Shown: positions 14,876 through 30,452, counted from the first letter of the whole stretch. The stretch: DNA of 63,678 nucleotides, filler included, from Octopus bimaculoides (GCF_001194135.2; 5 parts of 5 records of this genome joined end to end with filler, not necessarily neighbours in it); one strand, 5' to 3'. Program-made: numbers and translations. Notes: a model not told the origin generated them from the letters alone.

Positions 14876-15534
14876 GTAAGTATAGACATTGTCATAATCA
14901 TTATCATCATCATCATCATTTTTATGTCTGCTTTTCTAGGTTGGAATGGGTTGAATGAGTTGTTACAGACCAAGTCCTTATTGAGACTTATTTGCCCTCC
15001 TTGATTGGTTAAAGACCACATCTATTTTTGGTATGTTTTCTATAACAGGATGCCCTTCCCATTACCAGCTACTTTACCGAGTGTACTGGATGCATTTTAT
15101 CATGCCACCAGCACTTCAGAAGTTGTTTGGGAAGGTCAAAGGATTCTCATCCCTAAATGTCTCTCTTGTCCCTTTTCAACGATATGTTTCTATAGCTGAA
15201 TGAATGACCTTTCTAAAGCCTACCACTTCACAGAATGTGCTGGATACCTTTTTCTTTGCAGCACTGGTACTCGTGAGGTCAACAAGTAACTTGCATGGCA
15301 AAAGCCCTTGATTGAGGGTGGGGGGTGGGGGTAGTCTTGCGAGAGGTGGATTTATTGCAAGTGTTGAAAGGCCAAAATATAATAGTAAGACAGGTACAGG
15401 TGTCTTGTTGCAGAAGAGATACNNNNNNNNNNTTGCAAGTGTTGAAAGGCCAAAATATAATAGTAAGACAGGTACAGGTGTCTTGTTGCAGAAGAGATAC
15501 AAGGCTACCCCAGCTCTGTGTGTGTGTGTTTGCA

Positions 15535-17030: not shown

Positions 17031-17411
17031 ACTTACTCTTTACTCTTTTACTTGTTTCAGTCATTTTAACTGTGGCCATGCTAGAGCACTGCCTTTAGTC
17101 GAGCAAATCTACCCCAGGACTTATTCTTTGTAAGCCTAGTACTTATTCTATCGGTCTCTTTTGCCGAACCGCTAAGTTACGGGGACGTAAACACACCACC
17201 ATCGGTTGTCAAGCGATGGTGGGGGGGACAAACACAAACACACATACATACATACGATGGGCTTCTTTCAGTTTCCGTCTACCAAATCCACTCACAAGGC
17301 TTTGGTCGGCCCGAGGCTATAGTTGAAGACACTTGCCCAAGGTGCCATGCAGTGGGACTGAACCCGGAACCATGTGGTTGGTAAGCAAGCTACTTATCAC
17401 ACAACCACTCA
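17031..17411 (-). mobile_element. Long composite SINE (family D); other copies 18920-19297 (-), 29300-29665 (-), 33652-34104 (+) and partial copies elsewhere
   Basis: Head GCAGGAGTGGCTGTGTGG, CCTTGGGCAAGTGTCTTC segment, internal microsatellite and AAAGAGT-repeat tail. High identity between copies. Confidence 0.85.
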
Positions 17412-18684: not shown

Positions 18685-19103
18685 GTACACATGTATGTGC
18701 CTTGTCTTGACATCATGTAATGGTTGTTAAACAAACTAGTGATGGTGTTCATTTCCAATCTTCCATTGAAACATGGTTGGCCATGGGAAAAATATAACCA
18801 TGGTTGGAAAGAGGTGGGAGTTGCTGACAAGAAGGGCATCCAGCTGTAGAGAATCTGTCTTGACAAGTATGGAAAAGTGGGCGTTAAAATGATATTGGTG
18901 ATTGATATACCTATACATATATATTTTATTCCAGTCATTTGACTGCGACCATGCTGGAGCCCCGCCTTTAGTCAAATAAATCGACCCCAGAACTTATTCT
19001 ATCGGTCTCTTTTGTTGAACTGCTAATTTACAGTGACGCAAACACACCAACATTGGTTGTCAAGTGATGGTGCAGTGGAACAAACAGACACACAAACATA
19101 TAC

Positions 19104-19144
<41 letters not shown>

Positions 19145-19940
19145 NNNNNNNNNNTTTCTATCTACCAAATCGACTCACAAAGATTTGGTCGGCCCAAGGT
19201 TATAGTAGAAGACACTTGCCCAAGGTGCCATGCAGTGGGACTTGAACCCAGAACCGTGTGGTTGGTAAGCATGCTACATACCACACAGCCACTCCTATAT
19301 ATATATATATATATGACGTTAAACGATGAGGATGATGATGATGATATATATATATGTGTGTGTGTGTATATATGCATACACATACACAATGTACTGCTTT
19401 CAGTTTCCTCCTACCAAATTCACTCACAAGGCTTTGGTTGGCACTGGGGCTATAGTAGATGACACTTACCTTAGGTGCCATGCAGTGGGACTGAACCTGA
19501 GACTACACAGTTGAGAGATCAAGCTTCTTAAATACATGGCCACACTTGTGACTAAATAGGAATTAATTCTAAGAGAGAGAATTATTCAAATGTCAGATTT
19601 TTTGCTGGGGACTAAAGCTGGTGAAATATTGTTCACTAGTTAAATAATCATTTAATTAGAAATAATTAAGAATATTTGGTGAGACACCATTTTATCATTT
19701 AAATAGAAAAGCAATCAAAAATTTGAAACTGCTGGAAGCATCCTTCAAGATATTTATAATTTCTAAATTTATTTATTTCTGTCTAAGACTGAAAGAATTT
19801 TTATGAGAACACTTTTAAAGTGCACGTAATATATATGAAATTACTTTTGATTTAGATTGCTGAAAAAATTTTTTTGAATTACATTGTTAATTTCTTGTAA
19901 AATTTTACTGATAATTCATTTGAAATATATCTCTTTATAG

Positions 19941-20000
19941 TTTTGCAGTTGGGAAAATCCTCATTTCTCCTCAACAGTCTTGAGTGAACTGTTATGGCAG
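19941..20000 (+). CDS. USP9X: USP9X exon: [20 protein letters not shown]
   Basis: Near-identical to recalled [26 protein letters not shown] acceptor; GTGAGT donor at 20001. 60 nt. Confidence 0.96.
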
Positions 20001-20294
20001 GTGAGTAGTTTCATATATTTTATAGTTTTATATAAGTATTGTTTTACTTTTAACTTATTTGAAAACCATAATTAGCAACATGCAAAATTTTTGGCAGTTG
20101 AGAGCTTTCAAGAATTTTACTTTTGACACATTGTTTCGGTGGGTCTGGATCTCTTATAGTCCAGCTGGAGTATTGATACATGATGATGATGGCGGTGACA
20201 GCGGCAGCAGTTAGAAGCTTACAAGTCTACTTGGAAACTATGATTAACTTTTTTTTATTTACAATGGACGGATAGGTGTCCCCATGTTGTTGTT

Positions 20295-20341
20295 ATCGCA
20301 GTGTTTCAGCTGATGTACTCTCTAGCCTTCATCAGCTGTTC
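20295..20341 (-). ncRNA. Hammerhead motif in the inverted PLE terminus (decayed)
   Basis: Minus strand: CUGAUGA-A-GGCUAGAGAGUACAUCAGCU-GAAA-CACUGCG. Core intact; stems and cleavage triplet mutated. Confidence 0.6.
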
Positions 20342-21429
20342 TGGTGGAATTTTGAACCTACTAGATCATGTAAACTCAATAAAGCCATCCATATGGTTCA
20401 CAGTAGAAAAGGAAAAGGACAATCAGCTGACATTCCTGGACGTATTAGTAACATTGACTTCACAGTGCACTTAAAGGTAAATTTATTAATGCTTAATGCT
20501 TGTTCAGGACATCTGTATACCACAAGCCAACCTTCACTAGACAATACCTCAGCTTCAATTCTCACCATCCATACAATATAAAGAGAGGGATTGTTCAGTG
20601 CCTAAAACATCAAACAAGGACTATAAGTAGCGATCCTGATATGCACCAGGAAGAAATGATCAGGCTAAGAAACAATTTGCTATGCAACAACTACTCAAAG
20701 AACATATGTCCACTCCTATTAGGAAGAGGAGAGAAGATAAAACCCATGAACTGAGCACAGTTTGTCTACCCTGTGTCAAGGAGTCTCGGAAAAGATACAA
20801 AACACATGCTGTCCATATGACATCAGGACAGTATTCAGAAGTAATACCACCCTTCGCAAATATCTTCTCTGAGTAAAACCACCCATGGAAGAGAATATGA
20901 CCAAAAACTGCATGTACCCTATCCCATGCGATTGTGGTAGGTTATACAAAGGTAAAACATGCCACCCCCTTAAAGTAAGGGTAGAGGAATATCGTAAAGC
21001 TTTGACATGTGGGGTTGTTGAAAAATCAGGTATCGCCAATCATGTATGGAAAAACGGAGACCACCTCCCGTTGTAGGATGACATTAAAATAATTGACAGA
21101 GAACACCACTGGAAAATACGAAAATTAAAAGAAGCTGCACATATGTTAGGATACAATAACCTCCTAAGCAGACCAAGTGCAGATATGAATGTAATATGGG
21201 AACCGGTATTAAGAAACGATAAAATACTAGGTTTATAAGCCCTGAAATTCACTCTATAATAGCTCACGGGCATATAGTGTAGTGGATAAAAGCACAGGCT
21301 ACTAATCCTTGGATTCTCAGGCAGGGACTTGGAAAATAATATCAACAGATAAATAACATCAGCAGCATACCTTAGGAATGAGAACAGTGTACCCCATTAG
21401 TCAAAGGGTTGGGTTCGAAATTCCACCAG

Positions 21430-21475
21430 AACACCTGATGAAGGCTGGAGAGTACATCAGCCAAAACGTGATAAC
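21430..21475 (+). ncRNA. Hammerhead motif in the PLE 3' end (G12 mutated to A)
   Basis: AACAC-CUGAUGA(21435-21441)-A-GGCUG[GAGAGUACAU]CAGCC-AAAA-CGUGAU. Confidence 0.65.
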
Positions 21476-22461
21476 AACAAACAAGATGAGGACACCTGTC
21501 TATCCATTGTAAATAATGCACATAATTTCTCATCTCAAAAATATAGAATAGTATGATTACATTTGTAAATAAGCACCAAACTGACTTTGTAGCACAAAGA
21601 ATTTAATGTCAAGAAGAAGTGAAGCCTAATGTTCCTGGCAGAATACCTTTGTTTGAATTCTGTTTGTCAATGGCAAAGCATTACTGGTTTTCTCAGTTTC
21701 TCTCGTTTTTCTGTATGACTTTGTAGCAGTTTGGAGGCTCTTATTTTTATGGCTCTTATGGTCAGATTGTTTGAGAACAGTCTGCCATAACAAACTGTTT
21801 ATTGATTAAGTTTCTAGCCAGCTTCTGATACACATCTCTTCTTCTTAACACTATAGAAACCAAGATTAAAGCCTATGCTTTGTGTGTTAGTCAAGGATTT
21901 AAAAATATCTCCCTCTTTTTCTGATTTTCGAATAAATGCAAATTGTATGAGGATAGAGATTGTAGTTTGTTGGTGGATGTCAAAATATTTGCTTTCATTG
22001 TTCACTTTCATTTTAATTACTTTAAAACCCTTTTGTTATATCTGTTGAAATACACTGGGTTTGTTTCAATTAATTTTGAAAATAATGAAGAATTTAGTAA
22101 AATAACTATCCTTATTAAGCTGATGTTTGGAATATGACACGTTGATGGAAGATTTTAATTTAGATCTCTTTAAAATGGGAACTTTATATAGAGAACCAGC
22201 ATTTAATATTACAGAACCAGCACTTTATATTATAGGGCCAGTCTCTGTCAGATTAGTATCAAAAGGACTAAATATTTTCAATATGACTAAAGGTAATGAT
22301 TAAGGTGGCAGAGAGTGTGTGAATATAAGAGAAATATATTTTAGTATTGCAGAAGTTGTATAGATTTGTTTATGCAAGATTATTTAAAAAAAATTTTATT
22401 GTTTTGTATGAAGAAGACAAAATCAAAATGTTGATGAATGATATATTTTCTTTTATTACAG

Positions 22462-22570
22462 GTGGCTTACTCATACACTTATGAATTGAAACCCTATTTG
22501 GAACTTTTATTTCAAATGTTAATGCTTGATGATTCGTGGCAAAATCATCGAATTCACAATGCACTTAAAG
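22462..22570 (+). CDS. USP9X: USP9X exon: [36 protein letters not shown](G)
   Basis: [12 protein letters not shown]...[13 protein letters not shown] motif. TTACAG acceptor; GTAGAT donor at 22571. 109 nt, phase 0/1. Confidence 0.97.
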
Positions 22571-23152
22571 GTAGATTTACTAATGCTTAATTCTTACTGT
22601 AGAAATGTACCAATGCTTAACCTTTTCCTGACTGCTTAATACTGTAGGATATTAAAACATCTCTCATTTCAGTCCCTTTCTTTCATGGAATTTTAATTCT
22701 GTTCTGGGTCTCTGTCTATCTTATAACTCCCATTATTTTGAATAATAACTGGAAATAACTGGAATTAGGACTGTTTAATGACCTACTCTTGAACACAAGA
22801 TTAAATACAATAATTTCAGTAATAAATGACAAGTTATAATAGTTTTATTATGAATATCCATAAATGTTGAAACACTAGCCGAGAACATTTTGAAGAACAG
22901 TGTTTCAAAAATTAGTTAAACTTGATTGTGTTGAATTCTGATCTATTTTGTACATAGAAACTTTGTCTGTCTCTCTGTGTCTCTATCTCGGTCTGTCTGT
23001 CTCTTTCTGTAAAACATATGATTGTAGTATTTTAGAATTAGACTTAAAATTGAATCACTTGATATTAATGCATTTATATTAAGTTTGATCATGCTTATGC
23101 ATTTTAAATTTAAAATAAATTCATATTAAGTTAAAAATTCTTCTGTCTGTAG

Positions 23153-24156: not shown

Positions 24157-26316
24157 GTAAGTGATTTCTATATGATTACAATACTGCAGACACAAGAAAC
24201 TTGAGACATAGCATGTTTCTGGGCAACCTATGCTTTGGTATATGGTAACGAGTGAAAAAAGATCTAACACACAAATGCTGATGAACTGTTCATAAAAGCT
24301 GGCATAAAAATGACATTGATTTCAAGAGCTTGCTTTGCTTTTGCATTGCTTCATGTTAAGGATGATGATGATGATTATCATCATTGTTTTTATGTCCACT
24401 TTTTCCATGCTTGCATGGTTCAGATGGAGTTTATTGAGGTAGACTTTCTATGACCAGAGATGCGTTTGCTGTCACCAGCCCTCACCTATTTTCCATGCAA
24501 GGAAATGTTTCTCCATGGCCAGACATGTTCTTCATGGAAGACTAAAAACAAACAACATCATTTGAATGATGGTGATGCTCGACTCTAAATATGTTTGTTC
24601 TTTTTTTAATTCATTCTTATCAATTTTTATTGTTTGATATTCGTGACTTTTATATATTAATCAGAACTTGTAACTCACAAATGATATGACTTCTACGGGT
24701 GAGTTTAGAGTTCCTTATAGAGCATTATCATCCAGTCTGCATCCAGTATAGTGGTGTGGTTGTTACTGTACTTTGTAGTACCACTGGTTATGATAAACAG
24801 CAAATGTAGGGTAAATTATGATATAAACTTGTGTTTATCATATTTTATATTACACTCTCACACACAGGCATTAATAAAAAAACATGACTGAAAATAATTG
24901 AGAAGAGAAGTCTAATGAATCCTTCATACACACAAATGCTGATATGTATGTACAAATATATATACATTAAAGCCACACATTTTAATGTAGAACAGGATAT
25001 GAAACTAGAGTTGAGTTTTTCCCTGTTACTAAGTGTTATTTATCATCCTTGGCTAACATTTTAAACTAGTTCAAGAATGTCTGTAGGCATAATGTCACTA
25101 TGTACATATTAGGTGAGCTTGAAGAAGTATAATTTTGACGACAACATTTGTTTAACTGTGAAGTGCAATCAGTGCATCAATAAATATAACAATTTGTTTT
25201 TATCTGCAACAAGATCATCATCATCATTTAACATTCGTTGTCCATGCTGGCATGGGTTCGACAGTTTCACCAGAGTTGGGGAGCTGCACCAGACTCCAAT
25301 CTGATTTGGCATGGTTTCTATGGCTGGATGCCCTTCCTAATGCCAACCACTTTACAGTGTGCTGGGTGCTTTTATGTGGTGCTGCACATGGTAAATTTTC
25401 ATCTGCACAGGTGCATCTCTATATACAATGATTGTAGAGTAATTAATGAATAATAATCATAGCTTGCCAAGTAGACAGAATGTTTGAGGTTGTGCATTTC
25501 ATACCCTTAAGTCCATTTTGATATCAATTGATATCTCTGGTGATAGTCTAGTATTGGATTATGTGTGTTACATGTGCATCAAGTAAATAAAATAACAACT
25601 ACTATTGCAGAATTGTAGGTAGTAGTTGGTTGTTATATGTCTTCTATGTCATGGTTTTAATGTCTCCTTTCCCATGCTTGCATGGGTTGTACAAAGCTTA
25701 TTGGGGCAAATTTTCAACAGCGAGATGCCCTTCCTGTTTCCAAGCAAGGTATTTTTCCTATAGCAGAAACTGCTTGCATGATGGCAATGCTCATAACTCT
25801 TGTGTTATGTCAAGACAGGGGGTCAGACACCTACACACATGTATAAAATGAACTTCTTTCAGTTTCAATCTACCAGATCCACTCACAAAGCTTTAGTAAA
25901 CCTGGGGCTGTAGCAAAAGACACCTGCCCCAAGGTATCATTCAGTTGGATTGAATTCAAACCCATGAAGTTGAGAAGCAAACCTCTCAACCATACAGCCA
26001 TGCTGGCATCAATTACAATTTCATATAGTATTTTTAGTGGTTGAGAAATTTCTTATCTGCTCTATAATGTCCAATATTAACTCTTTTAAACCTATATTTA
26101 TAGCCCTCATGCTCTGTAAATGATTATTAAAACCATTTCCAGTTCTGAAAAAAAATTTTTTCTAATTATGCTACACTCTTTTCAACTGATCCAACTTATG
26201 TTTGGTTTTCAGAGGTCTTTTTCTGGTAATGCCCTGTGTATTTATAATTATAATGTTACATTCTTCTCATTGATACTATATTGTCAGCTAATTTGATTCT
26301 TATGTTTGATTTCCAG

Positions 26317-26393
26317 AGGCCTTATCCTGGTAATGCCCAGTATACTTATAATAATTGGTCACCTCCAGCTCAATCCAATGAGACCTCTAATGG
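26317..26393 (+). CDS. USP9X: USP9X exon: [25 protein letters not shown](G)
   Basis: [23 protein letters not shown] motif. TTCCAG acceptor; GTAAGT donor at 26394. Phase 0/2. Confidence 0.97.
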
Positions 26394-27536
26394 GTAAGTA
26401 CTTTTTGTTTTGTTTAAACAGTTTATATATTTCATAGCTGTTTATGTAGCTTTGTAGACTCTGTCAGTTCTGATGGAGTGGGCTCCAGCAGTGATTAAGC
26501 ACAAATATAAACATACTCAATAGAGTGACACGTTTCAGTGGAATTCTTATTGTTAGGTTTTGTGGTTGTAATTCCATCTTAAGTTTGTTTAGAAGTCTTA
26601 GTAAACTATCATCATCATTGTTTAACATCCGTCTTCCATGTATGCATGAGTAGGACAGTTGACAGGAGCTGACCAGGTAGAAGACTATCCCAGGCAGTGA
26701 GGTGGCAGAAACGTTAGCACACCGGGCGAAATACTTAGCGGTATTTTGTCTGCCATTACGTTCTGAGTTCAAATTCCGCCGAGGTTGACTTTGCCTTTCA
26801 TCCTTGTAAAGATATTATTGCTAAGTGTTAGGCACAAATTTAGTTTGTGCATTCCACATTCTTGAAATTTCTAACCAAAGTTCCAAATAATTACATTTTA
26901 CCCACATCCCTTACTAACTATATTTTGGTCACCTGGAATGATGACATTCTGTGTCACATTTCTGTGCTTCCTTCAGCAGTATTTGCTCTGGCTCTTCATC
27001 TTTTGACTTTAATTTTGCCTTTCATCCATCTAAGGTTGATAAAATAAAGTGCCAGCCTAGCTCTGGGGTCTATATAATTGACTGTTTCTCCCCTCCAAAT
27101 TTCTAGCTTGGTGCTTATGCTAGAAATTATTGAAGTCAGTCGATTGGCAGAATTGGTAAAACATCAAATAAAATATCTTAACCCTTGGGTATTCAGATTA
27201 CTCTGTCAAATGTAATGCTTATTTATTTACATTGTTTTGGATTAATCCCGCATTATCTCGTAGCTTTGAGATTTCAATGATGTGATTGGTTATTTTTAGA
27301 GTAACATTGTGGGGTTGGTGTAAGGGGCTGGATCTGGCCAGTCTGAACACAAAACATAGAATAATTAGGCTGGATATGGCTAGTTTAAATGCTAAGAGAT
27401 TAAAGTATTTGGTTATGGTTCTTTGTGCTGAATACAAACTGTAGAAAGTTTTTTTTTTTTATTTTGTGTTATTGTTGTTGTTATCATCATCATCATTATC
27501 ACCGTTGTTATTATTATTATTTTTTTTCTTCAACAG

Positions 27537-28790: not shown

Positions 28791-29792
28791 ATGAAACTTT
28801 GAAGCCACTGTCAGTACTATTATTGTTAAAGAATAATATTTTTGTACTCTACAAAAGTATGGAGTAACCCTTCAGATTAATTTGGTAAAACTGCTTTTAT
28901 TAGAACCGAACATAAAAACAAACATATCATCATCATAGTTGTCATTTGATGTCTGCTTTCCATGCTGGCATGAGTTAGATGGTTTGACTGGAACTGGTAA
29001 GCTGCACCAATTTTCTGTCTGATTTGGTATGGTTTCTATGACTGGATGTCCTTCCTAACACCAACCACTCCAAGAGTGTAATGGGTGCTTTTTACATGTC
29101 ACTGGCACGGGAAAACAATGATTAGTCACAAAATGGACTTCTTTCAGTTTCTATCTTTGAAATCCATTCCCAAGGCTTTGGTTGACCCAGGGCTATTGTA
29201 GAAGGCACCCACTTAAAGTAGCACACAGTGTGACTGAACCCAATACATGTAGGGAAGCAAATTTCTTAACCACATGACCAAGCCTGCACCTTCCTAATGT
29301 CTTTTATCTTTTACTTGTTTGTCATTTGATTGTGGCCATGCTGGGGCACTGCTTTGAAGGGTTTTTGGTTGAACAAACTGATCCCAGGACTTACTTTTAA
29401 AGTCTGATACTTATTCTGTCTGTGCCTTTTGCTGAACTGCTAAGTTACAGGGAAGTAAACACACCAACGCCAGTTGTTGAGTAGTGATGATGGGACACAC
29501 ACAACTGGCTTCTTTCAGTTTCTTTCTACCAAATCTACTCACAAGGCTTTGATCAGCCTGATGCTATAGTAGGAGACACTTGTCCAAGGTCTCACACAGT
29601 AGGATTGAACCTGGGAACCATGTGGTTGGGAAGCAAGCTTCTTACCACACAGCCACACCTGTGCCTCTGTATATTTTAAATTCAAATGTTTGGAAATCAA
29701 ATAAAATTTTGCATAAAATGCCTTTGTCTTTTTTTTGGTTTTGAAGGCAATGTCGATGTACTTTCTAACATTTATTTTTAAATTGTGTGCAG

Positions 29793-29941: not shown

Positions 29942-30452
29942 NNNNNNNNNNNNNNNNNNNNNNNNNNNNNNNNNNNNNNNNNNNNNNNNNNNNNNNNNNN
30001 NNNNNNNNNNNNNNNNNNNNNNNNNNNNNNNNNNNNNNNNNNNNNNNNNNNNNNNNNNNNNNNNNNNNNNNNNNNNNNNNNNNNNNNNNNNNNNNNNNNN
30101 NNNNNNNNNNNNNNNNNNNNNNNNNNNNNNNNNNNNNNNNNNNNNNNNNNNNNNNNNNNNNNNNNNNNNNNNNNNNNNNNNNNNNNNNNNNNNNNNNNNN
30201 NNNNNNNNNNNNNNNNNNNNNNNNNNNNNNNNNNNNNNNNNNNNNNNNNNNNNNNNNNNNNNNNNNNNNNNNNNNNNNNNNNNNNNNNNNNNNNNNNNNN
30301 NNNNNNNNNNNNNNNNNNNNNNNNNNNNNNNNNNNNNNNNNNNNNNNNNNNNNNNNNNNNNNNNNNNNNNNNNNNNNNNNNNNNNNNNNNNNNNNNNNNN
30401 NNNNNNNNNNNNNNNNNNNNNNNNNNNNNNNNNNNNNNNNNNNNNNNNNNNN

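What the first reader, a model, noticed from the sequence alone, without database searches (positions are those of the whole stretch)
20459..20501. 43-nt copy of a USP9X exon/intron junction embedded inside the PLE reverse transcriptase
Seen: TTCACAGTGCACTTAAAG|GTAAATTTATTAATGCTTAATGCTT matches 22553-22595 at 39 of 43 positions. That source is the last 18 nt of the IHNALK exon plus the first 25 nt of its intron, 2.1 kb downstream. The copy sits between FLDVLVTL and RTSVYHKPT, where PLE proteins normally have only a few residues. Because it includes intron sequence, the template was genomic DNA or unspliced pre-mRNA. It places a decoy donor (AAG|GTAAAT) in the preceding intron. Inference: a locally templated insertion from break repair or an RT template jump onto host pre-mRNA.
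Basis: partly seen in the sequence, partly recalled or inferred. Interest (0 to 1): 0.7.

Follow-up and report, generated by a model that had tools for sequence, protein, structure and literature searches.

The report
Host splice-junction patch inside dead retrotransposon
A decayed Penelope-like retrotransposon in an intron of an octopus-type USP9X/FAF gene lost about 15 bases and gained about 48 bases copied from the exon/intron junction 2.1 kb downstream, which is a real but ordinary scar of templated DNA repair or, less likely, of a reverse-transcriptase template jump.

Summary
Window 20459-20501 matches 22553-22595 at 39/43, and the match extends to 44/50 (20452-20501 vs 22546-22595). No such match occurs in shuffles, and BLAST gives E about 1e-10.

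The source is the true 3' end of a USP9X/FAF exon (22462-22570, ...IHNALK-G) plus the first 25 nt of its intron. The recipient is a 5'-truncated, decayed, sense-oriented Penelope-like element. Its body is 20359-~21554, with an inverted copy of its own tail at 20255-20358. It lies in the preceding intron (20001-22461).

Three related PLE loci, including an Octopus sinensis copy, have 15 nt (RT[N/E][Y/Q]GF) where the window has 49 nt. Of 81 related PLE proteins that span the site, 80 have that normal spacing, one has two extra residues, and none has this insert. The event is therefore a replacement (net +34 nt, frameshift, TAA stop) and not a family feature. The left junction shares CA(T); the right shares 0-1 nt.

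I favour DNA-level templated break repair (about 0.65) over a PLE reverse-transcriptase jump onto nascent pre-mRNA (about 0.25). The sequence alone cannot decide between them. The patch also supplies a donor-like AAG|GTAAAT site whose use is untested. This is a known kind of event and of modest interest.

The parts
20452..20501 (+). The patch: a copy of the host exon/intron junction inside the PLE reading frame. Positions 20452-20454 (CAT) are junction microhomology shared with PLE relatives. G20502 is either PLE-native (Gly codon third base, as in L002) or untemplated.
   Evidence: 39/43 and 44/50 identities. 34-nt gap in three PLE relatives. It introduces a +1 frameshift and a TAA stop at 20472-20474.
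22546..22595 (+). Template (source): the last 25 nt of the USP9X/FAF exon (..HRIHNALK-G) plus the first 25 nt of the following intron.
   Evidence: The exon part is conserved across animal USP9X/FAF proteins, so the direction of copying is gene to PLE.
22462..22570 (+). USP9X/FAF exon [36 protein letters not shown](G), with authentic donor AAG|GTAGAT at 22570|22571.
   Evidence: tblastn with P0216, P0122, P0121 and P0194. Pfam DUF3517. Splice-site inspection.
19941..20000 (+). Upstream USP9X/FAF exon [20 protein letters not shown], with donor CAG|GTGAGT at 20000|20001.
20001..22461 (+). Intron that hosts the PLE. It is phase 0 and is absent in several other animals' USP9X genes, where the two exons are contiguous.
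20359..21554 (+). Body of a 5'-truncated, decayed Penelope-like element in sense orientation. It comprises the end of the RT core (LLDHVNSIKPSIWFTVEKEKDNQLTFLDVLVT), the thumb/HTH region (RTSVYHKPTFTRQYLSFNSHHPY...), a GIY-YIG-like C-terminus (CMYPIPCDCGRLYKGKT..RVEEYRKA) and a roughly 340-nt 3' tail. It carries several frameshifts and stops.
   Evidence: The O. sinensis locus L003 aligns with 20362-21554.
20255..20358 (-). Inverted partial copy of the PLE's own 3' tail, abutting the 5' truncation point. This is the head-to-head arrangement typical of PLE insertions.
   Evidence: Inverted repeat with 21412-21516: 91 matches, 10 mismatches, 7 gap columns. A comparable inverted arrangement is seen in L002 and L003.
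21412..21516 (+). The 3'-tail arm of the PLE that pairs with the inverted copy.
20474..20482 (+). Donor-like site AAG|GTAAAT created by the patch. It matches MAG|GTRAGT at 8 of 9 positions, against 7 of 9 for the authentic AAG|GTAGAT.
   Evidence: Direct reading. Use in splicing was not tested.
20239..20246 (+). Candidate target-site duplication TATGATTA. The partner is at 21552-21559.
   Evidence: About 5% of random 50-nt pairs from this piece share 8 nt or more, so this is weak evidence.

Best explanation
A DNA break, or a stalled replication end, inside an already integrated and non-functional PLE copy was repaired by copying from a nearby template. About 13-15 nt of PLE sequence were lost (the codons for R-T-N/E-Y/Q-G). 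The left 3' end (...GTAACA) then paired through 2-3 nt (CA/CAT) with the homologous spot 2.1 kb downstream on the same chromatid. The template could have been that DNA or the nascent USP9X pre-mRNA lying on it. The end was extended for about 47 nt across the exon/intron junction, released, and joined to the right end (G)TTCAGG with 0-1 nt of homology. This is synthesis-dependent, microhomology-primed end joining of the Pol-theta/SD-MMEJ 'loop-out' type, which is the same class as class-2 templated sequence insertions. Shown: the copy, its source, its absence from relatives, the accompanying deletion and the junction sequences. Inferred: the break, the enzyme, and timing after integration. Consequences: the PLE frame is shifted and stopped, which is irrelevant because the copy was already truncated, and a donor-like site is planted in the intron.
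For: There is a net 34-nt gain with loss of the 15-nt native segment, relative to L003, L001 and L002, and none of the 81 related proteins spanning the site carries a comparable insert. Both PLE flanks remain collinear and resume within 15 nt of each other. That is what two ends of one break predict. The template lies in cis, 2.1 kb away on the other side of the presumed break, in direct orientation, as the loop-out/trans-templated mode predicts. Microhomology CA(T) sits at the priming junction and 0-1 nt at the closing junction. The patch has no poly(A) and no target-site duplication around it. Published POLQ scars in C. elegans are deletions with templated inserts primed by 1 nt or more; 2-3% copy from more than 1 kb away, and the synthesis is error-prone at about 1 in 30 (PMC5068794). 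Human class-2 templated sequence insertions show microdeletion, microhomology and non-templated bases, and intronic sequences serve as templates (PMC5110952).
Against: At about 47 nt the patch is longer than typical POLQ inserts (<25 nt), and its template is far more distant than the usual <20 bp. The patch lies only about 95-145 nt from the PLE's 5' truncation and inversion point (20359). A reverse transcriptase faltering near the end of cDNA synthesis would explain that clustering more naturally, since only about 12% of the element lies that close. The patch has the same polarity as both PLE and host RNA, which an RNA-templated event requires. Copy/source divergence (4/43, 6/50) cannot be told apart from the divergence of the PLE's two inverted arms (10/101; Fisher p = 0.78). 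So the event is not demonstrably younger than the integration.
Confidence: 0.65

Rival explanations
1. The PLE reverse transcriptase switched templates during target-primed reverse transcription at this site. While copying PLE RNA 3'->5' it left the template at (G)TTCAGG and copied about 47 nt of the nascent, unspliced USP9X pre-mRNA tethered at the locus (intron +25 back into the exon). It returned to the PLE RNA 15 nt further upstream via CA(T) microhomology, continued for about 95 nt, and then terminated with the self-primed inverted tail.
For: The patch, the PLE and the host transcript all have the same polarity. The patch is close to the 5' truncation/inversion junction at 20358|20359, which is itself a product of irregular RT priming or jumping. 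Its age is compatible with the integration. PLE retrotransposition tolerates intron-containing templates. Inserts between RT core and thumb, and captured host DNA, have been described in Adineta vaga PLEs and attributed to template jumps (PMC3846280). The site here is exactly at the C-terminal edge of the RVT_1 match.
Against: The model needs two internal, non-homologous switches that return to within 15 nt of the departure point on a template of 1.2 kb or more. Template jumping as documented for non-LTR RTs is end-to-end, from a template 5' end to an acceptor 3' end, not internal (my own knowledge; PMC8857657 was listed but not read). Known retroelement chimeras mostly involve abundant small RNAs joined at the 5' end, not an internal patch from target-gene pre-mRNA (my own knowledge). 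The first jump shows no microhomology.
Confidence: 0.25
2. The segment belongs to the PLE subfamily itself, or was spread by it. On this view, near-identical PLE copies elsewhere in the genome carry it, and the resemblance to the local exon junction has another origin, for example this locus acting as the master copy.
For: This cannot be excluded directly. No near-identical copies of this subfamily, and no sequence from the window's own genome, were retrievable.
Against: None of the 81 related PLE proteins spanning the site has the insert, and three related DNA loci lack it, including the O. sinensis copy that shares the 3' tail. The patch destroys the reading frame. The copy is 5'-truncated and lies in an intron, so it is a poor master. 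The source includes 18-25 nt of deeply conserved USP9X coding sequence contiguous with its own intron, 2.1 kb away.
Confidence: 0.04
3. The match is an assembly or sequencing artefact, such as a chimeric read or a misjoined contig, or it is chance similarity in AT-rich DNA.
For: The assembly is a draft, with N gaps and at least one gap-flanking duplicate (15355-15422 = 15433-15500, 100% identical).
Against: No gap lies within 1.3 kb of either copy. The copies differ at 4-6 positions, mostly transitions including a CpG->TpG change, as old paralogous sequence does; artefactual duplicates are identical. No match occurred in shuffles, and BLAST gives E about 1e-10.
Confidence: 0.03

Closest known systems
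Polymerase-theta-mediated end joining / SD-MMEJ 'delins' with templated inserts (van Schendel et al. 2016, PMC5068794)
   Same: A small deletion is replaced by sequence copied from an identifiable template. Priming uses 1-3 nt of homology. The direct orientation arises when the template lies on the other side of the break. A minority of such inserts copy from more than 1 kb away.
   Different: The insert here is about 47 nt and its template is 2.1 kb away, whereas typical inserts are <25 nt copied from within 20 bp. Enzyme dependence is unknown. This is a germline fossil in a cephalopod-type genome rather than an induced allele.
Class-2 templated sequence insertions / TSIPs in human (Onozawa & Aplan 2016, PMC5110952)
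   Same: A patch copied, not excised, from elsewhere fills a break. The junctions show microdeletion, microhomology and possibly one untemplated base, with no poly(A) and no TSD. Intronic or unspliced transcribed sequence can be the template, and an RNA intermediate is possible.
   Different: Human TSIs are usually 70-400 bp and come from distant loci. Here the patch is shorter and its template is local, in the same gene.
Insertions and host-DNA capture inside Penelope-like elements of Adineta vaga (Arkhipova et al. 2013, PMC3846280)
   Same: Foreign sequence sits inside a PLE at the RT-core/thumb boundary. The element has inverted pLTR-like termini. Those authors invoked template jumps, and intron-containing templates are tolerated.
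   Different: Those inserts are long (up to 1.5 kb), N-rich, keep the ORF open and are shared by family members. This one is 34 nt net, breaks the ORF, is absent from relatives, and has a template next door.
Chimeric retrocopies made by LINE RT template switching (e.g. U6/L1 chimeras; my own knowledge, not tested here)
   Same: Host RNA sequence is joined to retroelement sequence in the same polarity, with short or no junction homology.
   Different: Those chimeras are end-joined at the 5' side after a single switch, and they involve abundant small RNAs or mRNAs. Here an internal patch requires two switches and unspliced pre-mRNA.

Membership tests
Penelope-like element (endonuclease-containing) | Reverse transcriptase homologous to PLE RTs (RT core followed by the VYRKPT...NFNSHHP thumb region) | tested here: met
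   There are 144 homologues at E<=1e-5, many with precomputed PF00078 + PF26215, and one is annotated from Octopus sinensis. The alignment shows conserved FLDV..VY(R/H)KPTFT..YLNFNSHHPY. blastx identities reach 73%. Only the last part of the RT core survives in this truncated copy.
Penelope-like element (endonuclease-containing) | C-terminal GIY-YIG endonuclease | tested here: inconclusive
   The motif CMYPIPCDCGRLYKGKT..PLKVRVEEYRKA (relatives: CVYSIPCSCGKVYKGET.RPLKVRLEEHRKA) fits the VY..(9-11)..Y.G...R...E pattern by eye. Pfam gave no GIY-YIG hit for the window fragment or for the intact relatives P0001 and P0004, even at E<=10.
Penelope-like element (endonuclease-containing) | 5' truncation with tandem or inverted terminal repeat (pLTR-like) arrangement | tested here: met
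   A 104-nt inverted copy of the tail abuts the truncated body. L002 holds two head-to-head copies, and L003 has an inverted tail fragment upstream.
Penelope-like element (endonuclease-containing) | Hammerhead ribozyme motif in the terminal repeat | tested here: not met
   CTGATGA...GAAAC is visible in the tail arms and in L003. Rfam reports no hammerhead at E<=1 over the piece, nor at E<=10 over the element and the L003 tail.
Penelope-like element (endonuclease-containing) | Target-site duplication | tested here: inconclusive
   TATGATTA occurs at 20239-20246 and 21552-21559. About 5% of random 50-nt pairs do as well.
USP9X / FAF deubiquitinase gene | C-terminal DUF3517 region and best homologues named USP9X/FAF | tested here: met
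   PF12030 hits on three exon translations. Top named hits are USP9X (Penaeus vannamei), FAF-Y (Portunus trituberculatus) and FAF-X (Goodea atripinnis, Lamellibrachia satsuma). Nine collinear exons were mapped.
USP9X / FAF deubiquitinase gene | USP catalytic domain | not testable with these tools
   The catalytic domain lies upstream of the 17-kb piece.
Templated insertion from break repair (TMEJ/SD-MMEJ delins; class-2 TSI) | The inserted sequence has an intact template elsewhere | tested here: met
   The template at 22546-22595 is intact and functional, as exon end plus donor.
Templated insertion from break repair (TMEJ/SD-MMEJ delins; class-2 TSI) | Loss of recipient bases at the site (microdeletion) | tested here: met
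   The 15-nt segment present in L001, L002 and L003, and the six residues present in 80 of 81 proteins, are missing.
Templated insertion from break repair (TMEJ/SD-MMEJ delins; class-2 TSI) | Short microhomology at the priming junction; no poly(A) or TSD around the insert | tested here: met
   CA(T) is shared by PLE flank and template on the left, and 0-1 nt on the right. There is no A-run and no duplication at the patch borders. The ancestral PLE bases are inferred from relatives that are 68-73% identical at the DNA level (gaps counted).
Templated insertion from break repair (TMEJ/SD-MMEJ delins; class-2 TSI) | Typical size and distance (insert <25 nt, template within about 20 bp) | tested here: not met
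   The insert is about 47 nt and its template is 2094 nt away. This corresponds to the rare (2-3%) long-range class in PMC5068794.
Templated insertion from break repair (TMEJ/SD-MMEJ delins; class-2 TSI) | Occurred after integration; dependence on Pol theta | not testable with these tools
   This needs orthologous loci or alleles, or genetics.
RT template-switch chimera | Captured sequence in the same polarity as the element, and present from the moment of integration | tested here: inconclusive
   The polarity criterion is met. The timing cannot be resolved: patch divergence of 9-12% against 9.9% for the inverted arms.

The most novel reading that the evidence does not exclude
The patch records a PLE reverse transcriptase switching, in vivo and mid-template, onto the nascent unspliced pre-mRNA of the very gene it was integrating into, and then back again. 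That would be a direct footprint that target-gene transcripts are within reach of the PLE integration complex. It would also show that PLE RTs can make internal, non-homologous double switches. As a by-product the event planted a consensus-like 5' splice site, plus a possible 167-nt poison pseudo-exon (20310-20476), in a conserved gene.
Probability: 0.25. Interest if true: 0.6.

Novelty: new member of a known kind. Interest (0 to 1): 0.3.

Why it matters
This is a clean example of a templated 'filler' patch whose donor, recipient and junctions can all be read. The donor crosses an exon/intron boundary, so spliced mRNA is excluded as template. Such fossils calibrate how far and how long repair synthesis, or RT switching, can reach in animal germlines. 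If sister-species data showed that the patch arose at integration, it would bear on how Penelope-like elements, whose replication is poorly understood, handle templates. Functionally, the patch adds a donor-like site at least as close to consensus as the authentic one, inside an intron of a conserved deubiquitinase gene. Nothing shows that this site is used.

Tried and rejected
1. A third homologue search used the chimeric ORF that ends in the patch (MFQLMY...LVTLTSQCT). No candidate shared enough words, so no other ORF with this tail exists in the 5.8-billion-protein set. The window's own genome also appears to be absent from that set.

2. Exact-product look-ups of two window ORFs, the exon-containing ORF 22438-22590 and the PLE ORF 20885-21076, aimed to find the same locus in other assemblies or reads. 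Neither is on record.

3. A scan of JGI metagenome contigs with a degenerate 32-mer covering both the patch and its source gave 0 hits. This is uninformative, because the collection is unlikely to hold cephalopod DNA.

4. Rfam searches for a PLE hammerhead in the tail gave none. The microRNA-like hits are TA/TG microsatellites.

5. A Pfam search for GIY-YIG gave no hit.

6. I considered that the exon end and intron start were copied from the PLE. I rejected this because the exon part is conserved across animal USP9X/FAF proteins and PLE relatives lack the segment.

7. I considered two separate small insertions flanking a native TGCAC...AAGG. I rejected this as unparsimonious, because both pieces are contiguous in the source. 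The homeology GCAC..(A/T/G)(A/T)GG between the lost PLE segment and the patch is nevertheless noted.

8. I considered the 31-nt GT...AG unit inside the patch (20477-20507) as a mini-intron. I rejected this because it is too short and its removal still leaves the TAA stop.

9. I tried to use divergence to date the patch relative to integration. The counts are too small, and error-prone repair synthesis would confound the estimate.

Full report
**Observation**

Window 20459-20501 (TTCACAGTGCACTTAAAGGTAAATTTATTAATGCTTAATGCTT) matches 22553-22595 at 39 of 43 positions. The repeat finder extends the pair to 50 nt, 20452-20501 vs 22546-22595, 44/50, on the same strand with a 2094-nt offset. The 43-mer with up to 3 mismatches matched only itself in the window, and none of 100 dinucleotide-preserving shuffles gave any match. 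A sensitive self-BLAST scores the pair at E = 2e-10. It is the only direct repeat touching the region. The nearest N runs are at 19145-19154 and 29942-30452. The six differences include a CpG->TpG change and are mostly transitions. They argue for an old paralogous copy rather than an assembly artefact.

**Host gene**

Translations of ORF pieces on the + strand hit Pfam DUF3517. A concatenate of them finds proteins named USP9X, FAF-X or FAF-Y at E down to 8e-96. tblastn with four of these homologues maps nine collinear exons in the piece. The relevant ones are:
- 19941-20000: [20 protein letters not shown], donor CAG|GTGAGT.
- 22462-22570: [37 protein letters not shown], donor AAG|GTAGAT.
- from about 23153: (G)IPDDRDGLF....

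The exon part is conserved in USP9X/FAF proteins of many animals. This fixes the direction of copying as gene to PLE.

**Recipient element**

The intron 20001-22461 contains a decayed, 5'-truncated Penelope-like element in sense orientation. Three-frame translation shows:
- LLDHVNSIKPSIWFTVEKEKDNQLTFLDVLVT,
- then the patch,
- then (F)RTSVYHKPTFTRQYLSFNSHHPYNIKRGIVQCLKH...,
- then, after frameshifts and stops, CMYPIPCDCGRLYKGKTCHPLKVRVEEYRKA...LLSRPSADMNVIWEP.

A stitched translation finds 144 homologues, many with precomputed RVT_1 + PF26215 domains. One is annotated in Octopus sinensis. At DNA level the element aligns with three fetched loci:
- L001: 71%.
- L002: 68%.
- L003, from O. sinensis chromosome CM016859.1: 73% over 1201 columns, running through the 3' tail to window 21554.

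The body starts at 20359, directly after a 104-nt inverted copy (20255-20358) of its own tail (21412-21516). That pair has 91 matches, 10 mismatches and 7 gap columns. Such head-to-head or inverted terminal arrangements are standard for PLEs (PMC3846280) and are also seen in L002 and L003. A weak candidate TSD, TATGATTA, flanks the unit. Pfam does not call a GIY-YIG domain and Rfam does not call a hammerhead. PLE membership therefore rests on RT homology and terminal architecture.

**What happened at the site**

All three related DNA loci read AACA-[C/T]GCAC...GG[A/G]-TTCA[G/A]G, that is 15 nt coding (R/C)T(N/E)(Y/Q/C)G. The window has 49 nt (20454-20502) in that place. A four-way alignment shows a clean 34-nt gap in the relatives. 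Among the 120 listed related proteins, 81 span the site. Eighty have identical spacing, one has two extra residues, and none has an insertion of this kind.

The event is therefore a replacement. About 13-15 nt of PLE were lost and about 47-49 nt were gained. The net gain of 34 nt shifts the frame and brings in a TAA at 20472-20474.

At the left junction the bases CA(T) are shared by the PLE flank (GTAACA, with T next in L001) and the template (ATCAT|CGAATTC). The CATCGA->CATTGA difference is a CpG transition. At the right junction the copy ends at ...CTT and is followed by G20502. That G is PLE-native in L002 (GGG TTC), or else untemplated. The patch has no poly(A) and no duplication around it. 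The lost PLE segment (GCAC..A/TGG) weakly resembles the middle of the patch (TGCACTTAAAGG), which may have helped template choice.

The site coincides with the C-terminal edge of the RVT_1 match in intact relatives. The match ends at residue 188 of P0001, and FLDILIT occupies residues 192-198.

**Mechanism**

Because intron sequence is included, the template was genomic DNA or unspliced pre-mRNA. Two families of explanation remain.

(a) *DNA-level templated repair.* A break or stalled end in the PLE lost a few bases. The left 3' end primed on 2-3 nt of homology 2.1 kb downstream, copied about 47 nt, dissociated and was ligated to the right end. This is the delins signature of Pol-theta/SD-MMEJ. 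In C. elegans such inserts are primed by 1 nt or more, are mostly <25 nt and local, but 2-3% come from more than 1 kb away, and the synthesis is error-prone (PMC5068794). It is also the signature of human class-2 templated sequence insertions, which have microdeletion, microhomology, no TSD or poly(A), and intronic templates, possibly via RNA (PMC5110952). The strongest argument for this reading is that both PLE flanks resume within 15 nt of each other, as two ends of one break must. The cis location and direct orientation also fit the trans/loop-out mode.

(b) *A PLE RT double template switch onto nascent USP9X pre-mRNA during integration.* Several points favour it. The polarity is shared. 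The patch lies only about 95-145 nt from the truncation/inversion junction, where the RT demonstrably behaved irregularly. The age is compatible. There is also precedent for inserts at the RT-core/thumb boundary of PLEs attributed to template jumps (PMC3846280). Against it are the need for two internal non-homologous switches returning to almost the same spot, and the end-to-end nature of documented non-LTR template jumping (my own knowledge).

Dating does not help. Patch/source divergence is 4/43 to 6/50, against 10/101 for the inverted arms (Fisher p = 0.78), and error-prone repair synthesis would inflate the patch value.

I put (a) at about 0.65, (b) at about 0.25, and artefact or family-feature explanations at under 0.1 together.

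**Consequences**

For the PLE there are none that matter, because the copy was already 5'-truncated. For the host, the patch provides AAG|GTAAAT. This matches the donor consensus at 8 of 9 positions, against 7 of 9 for the authentic AAG|GTAGAT, which is the weakest donor among the nine exons in the piece. With the acceptor-like ttgttgttatcgcagtgtttcag|CTG at 20309|20310 it would define a 167-nt pseudo-exon. That pseudo-exon would be in frame with the upstream exon and would end in the TAA. This is a sequence-level possibility only, because no expression data were available.

**Limits**

The decisive tests could not be run. They are near-identical PLE copies in the same genome, orthologous introns in sister species, raw reads and RNA-seq. 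The window's genome is not represented in the searchable collections. The ancestral PLE bases at the junctions are inferred from relatives that are only 68-73% identical at the DNA level, with gaps counted.

**Verdict**

The event is an instance of a known class, a templated patch insertion. It is neat but ordinary unless sister-species data show that it arose during retrotransposition.

Noticed in passing
window 26195-26251 vs 26299-26355: This is a second local duplicate of a splice junction in the same gene. A 57-nt direct copy (48/57, 84%) of the 3' splice site plus the first ~41 nt of the exon at 26314-26394 lies 104 nt upstream. It gives a decoy acceptor tttggttttcag|AGG followed by a diverged pseudo-exon start. 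It looks like a small tandem duplication.
   Followed up: partly
window 15355-15422 and 15433-15500: Two 68-nt stretches are 100% identical on either side of a 10-N gap. This is the typical gap-flanking duplicate of a draft assembly, not biology.
   Followed up: no
window 17037-17410, 18926-19294, 19375-19553, 25818-26000, 29127-29274, 29300-29666: An interspersed, SINE-like repeat family occurs at 70-85% identity in several introns of the gene. It was not classified.
   Followed up: no
window 21433-21468 (and the reverse complement of 20303-20340); L003 2441-2477: The PLE tail contains CTGATGA-(stem/loop)-GAAAC. This spelling is intact in the inverted arm and in the O. sinensis copy; the direct arm has AAAAC. 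It resembles a hammerhead core as reported for PLE terminal repeats, but Rfam gives no hammerhead hit even at E<=10.
   Followed up: partly
window 20239-20246 and 21552-21559: A candidate 8-nt target-site duplication, TATGATTA, brackets the whole PLE unit (inverted arm + body + tail). About 5% of random 50-nt pairs from the piece share 8 nt or more, so the evidence is weak.
   Followed up: partly
window 22582-22590, 22612-22620 (and 20488-20496 in the patch): AATGCTTAA occurs three times in the window against 0.43 expected. Two copies lie in the first 50 nt of the intron after the IHNALK exon, with a near-copy GACTGCTTAAT at about 22633, and one lies in the patch. It may be a short intronic repeat or a regulatory motif.
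   Followed up: no
window 20001-22461 vs proteins P0174, P0186, P0194, P0236: The intron that hosts the PLE splits ...LLWQ|VAYSY.... In ORFs from several other animals' genomic contigs these two exons, and the preceding YVKK... exon, are contiguous. The intron is therefore lineage-specific or was lost elsewhere.
   Followed up: no
window 20310-20476: A possible 167-nt pseudo-exon is bounded by an acceptor-like site (ttgttgttatcgcagtgtttcag|CTG) in the inverted PLE arm and by the patch-derived donor AAG|GTAAAT. Read in frame with the upstream exon, it ends in TAA at 20472-20474. No expression data were available.
   Followed up: no
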